Shown here piece after piece: positions 3,523-39,220 of a stretch of 64,000 nt of DNA (its first letter is position 1; each line of letters starts with the position of its first letter). Below the pieces are notes generated by a model. That model did not search any database and had not been told where the DNA came from. It saw nothing but the letters and a program-made list of their open reading frames with translations. The DNA is from Iphione sp. A-MEVVRFRX5 (lineage: Eukaryota). The translations under genes and the position numbers were made by a program. The stretch covers positions 64,604,001 through 64,668,000 of the forward strand of contig OZ320316.1 of the NCBI GenBank assembly GCA_976226885.1, in the 5' to 3' direction.

Positions 3523-3848
3523 TTAGCAGGGCGCTGCAAGTGTGCGTATCACGTGCACTGTCAGGAGGGACCAGCACAACCAGCGGTAGAAGCCAGCGCA
3601 GGACGCCGAGGCGGAGCCGTTGCTCTTCCGGCCGAAATAGGTAATGCGCTCGGTGTCGTCGGGATCGTCAGGATCGTCGGTGTGTACTTTACTACTCCTA
3701 TGCTCCGGCGTGCGGGTGGTTCTTCCGTGCGGCGGCGGTCCTGGCGTACTGCTTCCTGTAAACGGAGTGGCGGGCGGGGGCCCCGCTGTTCGTTCATCCG
3801 GTAAAACCACTCGGCCGTTGCCTTTGTGACATGGCTGTAGGACTCGAT
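3523..3848 (-). CDS. Exon 16 (terminal): RVLQPCHKG...Pro/Thr-rich stalk...DDPDDPDD...SNGSASASCAGFYRWLCWSLLTVHVIRTLAAPC*
   Basis: Acceptor ttcttttttttgtAG; open to TAA at 3525-3523; matches the 3' part of track ORF 3523..3942. Confidence 0.9.

Positions 3849-39220: not shown

What the first reader, a model, noticed from the sequence alone, without database searches (positions are those of the whole stretch)
3523..39220. Hidden 36-kb gene: secreted/GPI-type protein with an ShKT toxin-like domain between two duplicated Cys-rich modules
The ORF track shows only fragments, but 16 exons splice into one clean 723-aa frame (seen). The architecture SP-[module]-ShKT-[module]-stalk-hydrophobic tail suggests a cell-surface protein of an uncharacterised family (inference). 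The modules resemble DUF7043/DUF7044 plus DUF7042 proteins of invertebrates (recalled). I know of no described function for this combination, so it is the best candidate for an undescribed system here.
Basis: partly seen in the sequence, partly recalled or inferred. Interest (0 to 1): 0.8.

Follow-up and report, generated by a model that had tools for sequence, protein, structure and literature searches.

The report
Multi-exon ShKT, four-barrel surface protein gene
The 36-kb stretch really holds one intact 16-exon gene for a 723-residue secreted or membrane-tethered protein, but it is an ordinary member of an invertebrate family that databases already list and whose function nobody has studied.

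Summary
Confirmed. On the minus strand, 16 exons (39220 to 3523) with 15 GT-AG introns splice into one 723-codon frame, which I rebuilt independently. Three multi-exon paralogs on the same chromosome conserve exons 2-15. Full-length homologues from the annelid Capitella teleta and a chiton align collinearly across every junction. Fourteen of the 15 introns lie at the same positions as in the Capitella gene.

The layout is signal peptide, module 1, ShKT, module 2, Pro/Thr stalk, hydrophobic C-terminus. Each module is DUF7043/7044 plus DUF7042. The ShKT exon passes Pfam's cut-off. The two modules are related only at profile level (hhalign 97%, E 2e-11).

AlphaFold models of a paralogue and of the Capitella homologue (pLDDT about 80) show four small beta-barrels of lipocalin/calycin type. 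My inferred function is a cell-surface, probably GPI-anchored, binder of hydrophobic ligands.

The family is already catalogued as Pfam DUFs and as "ShKT domain-containing protein" in molluscs, annelids and arthropods. No paper on it was found. This genome holds at least 11 further copies, eight of them intronless. No RNA run was listed, so expression is untested, and this copy's C-terminal tail is weak. An earlier scan note (s1-347267) found the same architecture elsewhere in this genome. Verdict: new member of a known, uncharacterised kind.

The parts
39139..39220 (-). Exon 1: start codon (alternative ATGs at 39199 and 39193) and signal-peptide-like hydrophobic stretch; ends in phase 1
   Evidence: It is the only ATG + hydrophobic + phase-1 consensus-donor candidate on the minus strand between 28117 and 50000. 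The donor is AAG|GTAAGT.
27816..28116 (-). Exon 2: start of module 1 (CRFP... motif, first barrel, DUF7043-like)
   Evidence: 47%, 41% and 30% identity to paralogues A, B and C. Matches my profile built from the intronless paralogues. Aligns to P0049.
21256..21320 (-). Exon 3: module 1, first barrel
   Evidence: The intron position is shared with P0049.
21046..21120 (-). Exon 4: module 1, link between barrels
17466..17545 (-). Exon 5: module 1, start of second barrel (CPLTGGFDF; DUF7042-like)
16082..16199 (-). Exon 6: module 1, second barrel (RIESECIYGEGL motif)
   Evidence: 54-66% identity to paralogues. Profile hit E 4e-6.
15740..15831 (-). Exon 7: module 1, second barrel
15420..15552 (-). 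Exon 8: end of module 1
   Evidence: The acceptor has a weak polypyrimidine tract (9 of 20).
13801..13920 (-). Exon 9: ShKT domain with six Cys, in phase 1 on both sides
   Evidence: Pfam ShK 27.9 bits against a cut-off of 20.9. 50-71% identity to paralogues. The nearest solved ShKT peptides are AcK1 and BmK1, weakly, at E about 0.01.
13215..13416 (-). Exon 10: start of module 2 (CRFP...QGEW; DUF7043/7044)
   Evidence: DUF7043 20.7 bits and DUF7044 18.8 bits on this piece alone. 51-65% identity to paralogues. 67 database hits.
12898..12962 (-). Exon 11: module 2, first barrel (NG|CRPRYSC junction)
   Evidence: The same joined sequence is seen in P0041 and in the full-length homologues.
7298..7402 (-). 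Exon 12: module 2, link between barrels
   Evidence: 43-64% identity to paralogues.
6026..6202 (-). Exon 13: module 2, second barrel (DUF7042)
   Evidence: DUF7042 15 bits on this piece alone. 41-46% identity to paralogues.
5486..5577 (-). Exon 14: module 2, second barrel
4077..4215 (-). Exon 15: end of module 2 and linker (alternative donor at 4131)
   Evidence: The longer form is favoured by conservation of ...RAQCGxxxD and of the following residues.
3523..3848 (-). Exon 16: linker Cys, Pro/Thr-rich stalk, small-residue stretch (NGSASAS), weakly hydrophobic C-terminus and stop codon (alternative acceptor at 3899)
   Evidence: The first polyadenylation-type hexamers lie about 1.5 kb further on, at window 1998 and 1929.

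Best explanation
This is one intact, intron-rich gene on the minus strand: 16 exons over 35.7 kb. It encodes a 723-residue extracellular protein.

The order of parts is: signal peptide; module 1 (DUF7043/7044 barrel plus DUF7042 barrel); a six-cysteine ShKT knot; module 2 (the same two barrels, an ancient internal duplication); a Pro/Thr-rich, probably O-glycosylated stalk; and a short hydrophobic C-terminus with no cytoplasmic part.

Shown here: the gene model, the domain order, family membership by homology, the internal duplication, and the predicted fold of relatives. That fold is four small disulfide-rich up-and-down beta-barrels of lipocalin/calycin type.

Inferred, with my odds:
- The protein is displayed on the cell surface, most likely through a GPI anchor. 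I put this at about 0.5 for this copy and higher for the family.
- Its barrels hold small hydrophobic or lipid ligands or lipidated proteins. The models for this are lipocalins, the GPI-linked insect lipocalin Lazarillo (recalled from my own knowledge, not checked here) and the two-barrel surface lipid binder APCDD1. I put this at about 0.35.
- The ShKT knot serves as a rigid spacer or protein-contact module, not as a toxin.

The gene belongs to a family that has expanded in this genome. There are four multi-exon copies on this chromosome and at least eight intronless copies elsewhere. The family is shared with annelids, molluscs and arthropods.
For: Gene model.

Independent support for the junctions comes from three sources. 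Full-length homologues P0049 (Capitella teleta CAPTEDRAFT_227924), P0071, P0073 and P0081 (chiton Liolophura japonica assembly) align collinearly over all junctions. Fourteen of the 15 intron positions are shared with the Capitella gene. An annotated gene fragment in another genome joins the ShK exon to the next exon in the same way (P0069).

Domains: ShK is above the cut-off on exon 9. DUF7043, DUF7044, DUF7042 and ShK are above their cut-offs in the homologues and paralogues.

Duplication: hhalign 97.3%, E 1.8e-11.

Fold: the models have pLDDT 79.5 / pTM 0.81 and pLDDT 80.2 / pTM 0.77. The best structural match is the lipocalin-fold protein Tp0751, at Z 9.8 and 9.7 (rmsd 2.6-2.9 over 96-97 residues). 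All four barrels also hit lipocalins at Z 5.4-7.5.

GxW: a Gly-x-Trp after the CxFP motif is nearly invariant at the start of module 2. In module 1 only the Trp is nearly invariant.

C-termini: 24 of 27 family members end in a hydrophobic stretch 0-15 residues from the end.

Taxa: Atlas clusters are commonest in Mollusca and Arthropoda.
Against: There is no transcript evidence. No RNA run was listed, so expression and the junctions are untested at the RNA level.

The spliced protein itself could not be submitted to Pfam or to structure tools because it has no reference. Its family membership and fold therefore rest on homologues at 31-37% identity and on paralogues at about 20-25%.

Most lipocalin matches have Z below 8, which the tool warns is common for small barrels. 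No lipocalin or APCDD1 Pfam model matches at E up to 10, and no solved structure matches by sequence.

This copy's C-terminal tail is only weakly hydrophobic (1.69) and contains Arg and His. No ligand, partner or phenotype is known for any family member.
Confidence: 0.7

Rival explanations
1. The protein is secreted, or retained in some other way, and is not GPI-anchored. On this reading the C-terminal stretch of this copy is not a working GPI signal.
For: The tail FYRWLCWSLLTVHVIRTLAAPC has a best 12-residue hydropathy of 1.69, against 2.5-3.3 in most relatives, and it is broken by Arg and His. Two relatives (P0004, P0073) have no hydrophobic end at all.
Against: A stretch of small residues (NGSASAS) precedes the tail, as at omega sites. 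24 of 27 relatives end in a hydrophobic stretch with no cytoplasmic domain. The Capitella model predicts a terminal helix after a disordered stalk.
Confidence: 0.3
2. The locus is an unexpressed or recently inactivated copy within a large family. It would be intact in frame but not functional.
For: No RNA run was listed. The genome holds many paralogues, some visibly decayed: the L007 ORF stops after ShK, and L006 has lost the ShK cysteines. This copy has the weakest tail.
Against: All 16 exons are open and all 15 introns are GT-AG, with a perfect first donor. The cysteines and motifs shared with homologues at 31-37% identity are kept along the whole length. A 2.2-kb frame spread over 36 kb is unlikely to stay intact without selection.
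Confidence: 0.1
3. Exons 1-8 and exons 10-16 belong to two separate genes, each encoding one module. The 723-codon frame would then be an artefact of joining them.
For: The only support is the absence of transcript data and the modular, duplicated build of the protein.
Against: Exon 9 is in phase with both neighbours. Exon 10 has no start codon or signal peptide of its own. Six intronless paralogues with the central ShK-like motif in this genome carry module-ShK-module in one uninterrupted ORF. The Capitella and chiton gene models do the same. Another genome's annotation joins the ShK exon to the next one.
Confidence: 0.03
4. The protein is a venom or defence toxin precursor whose ShKT domain blocks potassium channels through its Lys-Tyr pair.
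For: The ShK domain is real. The motif HKYANFC places Lys-Tyr five and four residues before the fourth Cys, as an earlier scan note (s1-334920) says for BgK; I have that spacing from memory only. The nearest solved sequences are the worm peptides AcK1 and BmK1, which I recall to be channel blockers; this was not checked here.
Against: The domain is buried between two 250-290-residue modules of a tethered 723-aa protein, with no dibasic processing sites flanking it. The Lys is not conserved: it is Gln in paralogues A, B and C and Glu in P0071 and P0073. From general knowledge, ShKT domains are common in non-toxin extracellular proteins of invertebrates.
Confidence: 0.04

Closest known systems
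Pfam DUF7043 / DUF7044 / DUF7042 (/DUF7045) proteins, listed as 'ShKT domain-containing protein' or 'DUF7043 domain-containing protein'; example: Capitella teleta CAPTEDRAFT_227924
   Same: The length (about 640-730 aa) and the order of parts are the same: SP, barrel pair, ShKT, barrel pair, stalk, hydrophobic end. Identity is 36.7% over 650 residues. Fourteen intron positions are shared.
   Different: Nothing essential differs. This copy has very long introns (gene 35.7 kb against 6.7 kb in Capitella) and a weaker C-terminal hydrophobic stretch. The family itself has no known function.
Lipocalins / calycins, including the GPI-linked insect lipocalin Lazarillo (Lazarillo from my own knowledge, not checked here)
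   Same: They share the predicted small up-and-down beta-barrels. A Gly-x-Trp after the CxFP motif is nearly invariant at the start of module 2; in module 1 only the Trp is. My reading that the first strand of lipocalins carries the same GxW motif is from memory and was not tested. Both are extracellular and, for Lazarillo, lipid-anchored. Structural matches are Z 5.4-9.8.
   Different: No sequence or Pfam match was found. This protein has four barrels in one chain, many disulfides and a central ShKT knot. Most Z scores are in the range the tool calls common for such barrels.
[quoted passage not shown]
   Same: Both are membrane-tethered, cysteine-rich ectodomains built from pairs of apposed beta-barrels. 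One barrel matches at Z 6.1-6.3 over 115 residues.
   Different: Only one barrel aligns, and no better than ordinary lipocalins do. No APCDDC Pfam hit was found. APCDD1 has a transmembrane helix and no ShKT. It is an analogy, not family membership.
ShKT (ShK toxin-like) domains, for example worm peptides AcK1 and BmK1 and sea-anemone ShK and BgK
   Same: The six-Cys pattern matches and the Pfam hit is above the cut-off. There are weak matches to AcK1 and BmK1.
   Different: Here the domain is an internal part of a large tethered protein, and the Lys of the Lys-Tyr pair is not conserved among paralogues.

Membership tests
ShK domain-like (Pfam PF01549) | Profile score at or above the curated cut-off (20.9 bits) | tested here: met
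   Exon 9 ORF scores 27.9 bits, E 3.6e-6. The same domain is found in 18 of 20 family members.
ShK domain-like (Pfam PF01549) | Six cysteines in the ShKT spacing, ending ...C-x3-C-x2-C | tested here: met
   The sequence is C-x6-C-x8-C-x11-C-x3-C-x2-C in CYDESEECRRSAQEGKCTNTALHKYANFCKRSCGLC.
ShK-type potassium-channel toxins | Free small peptide with a conserved functional Lys-Tyr pair that blocks Kv channels | tested here: not met
   The domain is internal to a 723-aa protein. Lys-Tyr is present here, but the Lys is Gln or Glu in paralogues and homologues. Channel block cannot be tested with these tools.
DUF7043 / DUF7044 (PF23070 / PF23071) | Profile score at or above the cut-off (27 bits) | tested here: inconclusive
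   Only exon pieces could be submitted. Exon 10 gives 20.7 and 18.8 bits and exon 2 gives nothing. Homologues that align end to end with the spliced protein pass: P0071 77.6 and 44.9 bits, P0049 38.2 bits. The spliced protein has no reference and was not scanned.
DUF7042 (PF23069) | Profile score at or above the cut-off (27 bits) | tested here: inconclusive
   Exon 13 alone gives 15 bits. Homologues P0071 (40.5 bits) and P0081 (40.4 bits) and paralogues L001, L003, L005, L007 and L008 pass.
DUF7043-DUF7042 two-module proteins | Two tandem copies of the barrel pair in one polypeptide, with a central ShK-like knot | tested here: met
   Module 1 against module 2 by hhalign gives 97.3%, E 1.8e-11 over 212 columns. 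The alignment with full-length homologues is collinear. The ShK-like motif sits at the same place in 21 of 23 relatives.
Lipocalin / calycin superfamily | Closed eight-stranded antiparallel beta-barrel | tested here: inconclusive
   The models are of a paralogue and of the Capitella homologue, not of this protein. The best match is Tp0751 at Z 9.8 and 9.7. Lipocalins match at Z 5.4-7.5 on all four barrels. Foldseek found nothing at E <= 0.001 for the module.
Lipocalin / calycin superfamily | Sequence-level membership (Pfam lipocalin models or solved relatives) | tested here: not met
   No lipocalin family matched at E <= 10 in 20 members. No solved relative was found by profile. Only a GxW motif is shared.
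APCDD1 (Pfam APCDDC) | Profile match, and both apposed barrels superposing together | tested here: not met
   There is no Pfam hit. Only one barrel aligns, at Z 6.1-6.3, no better than unrelated lipocalins.
GPI-anchored surface proteins | N-terminal signal peptide plus a C-terminal signal of small omega residues, a spacer and a hydrophobic end with no cytoplasmic tail | tested here: inconclusive
   A signal-peptide-like stretch is present, with 15-residue hydropathy up to 2.39. NGSASAS is followed by a weak hydrophobic end (1.69) in this copy, while 24 of 27 relatives have a hydrophobic end. SignalP and NetGPI were not available.

The most novel reading that the evidence does not exclude
The DUF7043/DUF7042-ShKT proteins may be an unrecognised class of membrane-anchored 'four-lipocalin' receptors of protostomes. 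On this reading they capture lipids or lipid-modified signals at the cell surface, functionally parallel to APCDD1 or Lazarillo, and the central ShKT knot contacts a partner such as an ion channel. The expansion in this genome, through both an intron-rich and an old intronless branch, would then reflect diversification of ligand specificity.
Probability: 0.2. Interest if true: 0.55.

Novelty: new member of a known kind. Interest (0 to 1): 0.3.

Why it matters
The result shows that a raw-sequence reader can assemble a correct 16-exon gene from a 36-kb stretch. It also gives a checked gene model for one member of a widespread invertebrate family found in molluscs, annelids and arthropods. For that family I found no publication.

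The one piece of added value is structural. Both modules are predicted to be pairs of lipocalin-like barrels flanking a ShKT knot on a tethered stalk. That turns 'domain of unknown function' into a testable idea, namely surface binding of hydrophobic ligands. For this particular locus nothing is unusual.

Tried and rejected
- RNA evidence: the look-up of sequencing runs listed no RNA run, so read laying was not used and no junction could be tested with reads.
- tblastn of the eight intronless paralogues against the window was too weak to define exons. A profile built from them found only some exons.
- Pairwise alignment of module 1 against module 2 was not significant (z 0.55). Only the profile comparison showed the duplication.
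- Pfam on single exons was mostly blank.
- The spliced 723-aa protein has no reference, so it was not sent to Pfam, structure or database tools.
- The word search with paralogue L002 returned 15 unnamed orthologues of that paralogue, not of this gene. The cluster look-up gave no names. The word search with the family alignment returned only P0049.
- The profile search against solved structures found only weak ShKT peptides.
- Foldseek against PDB was uninformative for the module and for the full-length model.
- Literature searches for the DUF names, Pfam accessions and the Capitella locus tag found nothing.
- The alternative last two exons (722-aa model) were rejected on conservation.
- Rfam found nothing in the window.
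- The organism of the window was not identified. Its relatives point to a lophotrochozoan.

Full report
**Observation.** The window has no N and looks like an intron-rich animal genome: about 42% GC and only short ORFs. It lies at G000:C10:64604001-64668000 in a 1.18-Gb assembly. On the minus strand, one ORF fragment matches Pfam ShK above its cut-off (27.9 against 20.9 bits). Others give weak DUF7043/7044 and DUF7042 hits.

**Locating the exons.** Six-frame comparison of the minus strand with three paralogous loci on the same chromosome picked out 14 conserved coding blocks in one order, at 30-71% identity. The loci are:
- A: C10 about 64,475,555-64,501,793 (+)
- B: about 67,259,123-67,288,312 (-)
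- C: about 67,419,398-67,457,900 (-)

They were found and fetched. Intron DNA matched only as repeat-like pieces containing stops.

**Building the model.** I chose for each block the acceptor and donor that keep phase. This gives 16 exons, 15 GT-AG introns and a 2172-nt frame of 723 codons plus a stop. The first exon is the only ATG + hydrophobic + phase-1 consensus-donor candidate on the minus strand between 28117 and 50000.

**Independent checks of the model.**
- A search of 1.84 billion representative proteins with exon 10 alone gave 67 hits. Most are single-exon fragments, but four are full-length or nearly so: P0049, P0071, P0073 and P0081.
- The spliced protein aligns with P0049 over residues 7-652 (36.7% identity). 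It also aligns with the others, collinearly and with no indel at any of my junctions.
- P0049 is the NCBI protein CAPTEDRAFT_227924 of the annelid Capitella teleta, from assembly GCA_000328365.1.
- I mapped P0049 onto its own 6.7-kb gene. Introns 2-15 of the window's gene fall within one residue of Capitella introns. Only the signal-peptide intron differs.
- P0081 comes from the chiton Liolophura japonica assembly and is a 24-kb gene.
- An annotated fragment in a further genome (P0069) joins the ShK exon to the next exon as ...CGLC-E-LVPS..., just as here.
- A 722-aa alternative for the last two exons also keeps the frame. It loses residues conserved in paralogues and homologues.

**What the protein is.** In order it has:
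- a signal-peptide-like N-terminus;
- module 1, residues 29-316, with 11 Cys;
- the ShKT knot, residues 317-356, with 6 Cys;
- module 2, residues 357-600, with 12 Cys;
- a linker with one Cys, then a Pro/Thr-rich stalk (12 Pro and 10 Thr in 60 residues);
- the stretch NGSASAS and a weakly hydrophobic end.

Pfam on relatives fixes the module content. DUF7043 (with overlapping DUF7044) is followed by DUF7042, twice, with ShK between. This holds in the Capitella and chiton homologues and in the paralogues of this genome. The two modules of this protein are not detectably similar pairwise. As profiles they are clearly related: hhalign 97.3%, E 1.8e-11, 212 columns. The duplication is therefore old.

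**One gene, not two.** The genome also holds at least eight intronless paralogues on other chromosomes, L001-L008, with ORFs of 405-1169 aa. Six of them carry module, ShK-like knot and module in one uninterrupted ORF. This is direct evidence that the order belongs to one polypeptide.

**Fold and likely mechanism.** I made two AlphaFold models. One is of module 1 plus ShK of paralogue L002 (pLDDT 79.5, pTM 0.81). The other is of the whole Capitella homologue (pLDDT 80.2, pTM 0.77). The full-length model shows:
- a signal helix;
- four all-beta domains;
- short ShKT helices;
- a disordered stalk (residues 634-679);
- a terminal helix.

An exhaustive structural comparison gives the lipocalin-fold protein Tp0751 as the best match for the DUF7042 barrels, at Z 9.8 and 9.7 (rmsd 2.6-2.9 over 96-97 residues). 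Many lipocalins match on all four barrels at Z 5.4-7.5, including a leukotriene-binding salivary lipocalin, a retinoic-acid-binding protein, nitrophorin 2, RBP4, ApoD, alpha-1-microglobulin, tear lipocalin and Per a 4.

One barrel of APCDD1 matches at Z 6.1-6.3. APCDD1 is a surface protein of two apposed barrels that binds lipid and WNT (PMC10193966).

These Z values are mostly in the range the tool calls common. Foldseek found nothing clear. No lipocalin or APCDD1 sequence model matches. So I claim a lipocalin-like fold, not membership of either family.

A Gly-x-Trp after the CxFP motif is nearly invariant at the start of module 2. In module 1 only the Trp is nearly invariant. Lipocalins, as I recall, carry a GxW motif on their first strand.

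**Anchoring.** Of 27 family members, 24 end in a hydrophobic stretch 0-15 residues from the C-terminus with no cytoplasmic domain. That pattern is typical of GPI signals. This copy's tail is among the weakest.

**My reading of how it works.** It is a tethered, glycosylated surface protein whose four barrels bind hydrophobic ligands, with the ShKT knot as a spacer or contact module. The gene, the architecture and the fold are shown. Anchoring and ligand binding are inferred.

**Toxin reading.** Its nearest solved relatives are the worm peptides AcK1 and BmK1, weakly. However, the Lys is Gln in paralogues A, B and C and Glu in P0071 and P0073, and the domain is internal to a large protein. I find a toxin role unlikely.

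**Novelty.** The ESM Atlas has clusters named 'ShKT domain-containing protein' (700 aa) and 'DUF7043 domain-containing protein' (651 aa), commonest in Mollusca. It also has DUF7042/7043/7044(/7045) clusters commonest in Arthropoda. UniRef calls the Capitella protein 'ShKT domain-containing protein'. Its 2193 letters equal the length of the L002 ORF, though I did not confirm the identity. The kind is therefore catalogued. What is missing is any study of it: no paper in the library names the domains, the accessions or the Capitella locus.

**Limits.**
- No RNA run was listed, so expression and the junctions are untested at the RNA level.
- The spliced protein could not be submitted to the tools because it has no reference.
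- The species was not identified.

**Verdict.** The gene is a new member of a known but uncharacterised family, of modest interest.

Noticed in passing
window 17737-18842 (inside intron 4): This is a single-copy 1.1-kb stretch with higher GC. It has overlapping long minus-strand ORFs in all three frames (207, 233 and 154 aa, Pro-rich). It has no Pfam hit and is not conserved in the paralogous loci. It remains unexplained.
   Followed up: partly
window 10406-11193, 7931-8033, 32074-32236: These intron pieces match introns of paralogue A in translated comparison, but with stops. They are probably interspersed repeats shared between the loci. Tandem repeats lie at 10711-10806 and 10936-11038.
   Followed up: no
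G000:C10 about 64,475,555-64,501,793 (+); 67,259,123-67,288,312 (-); 67,419,398-67,457,900 (-): Three multi-exon paralogues of the gene lie on the same chromosome. The nearest is about 106 kb from this gene's 3' end, in convergent orientation.
   Followed up: partly
L001-L008 (G000 contigs C1, C2, C4, C15, C22): At least eight intronless paralogues carry the same module-ShK-module layout. The orthologues of one of them (L002) in other species are 33-70% identical, so this intronless branch is old and not a set of recent retrocopies. The L007 ORF ends right after ShK (405 aa), and L006 has lost the ShK cysteines.
   Followed up: partly
window 13801-13920 (ShKT exon): The Lys-Tyr pair noted by another first-stage finding is not conserved. 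It is Gln-Tyr in paralogues A and B, Gln-Phe in C, and Glu-Tyr in P0071 and P0073. It is Lys-Tyr only here, in Capitella P0049 and in chiton P0081.
   Followed up: yes
window 40000-64000 and 1-3500: ORFs of 110 aa or more outside the gene have no Pfam hit, and the whole window has no Rfam match. I recognised no neighbouring gene.
   Followed up: partly
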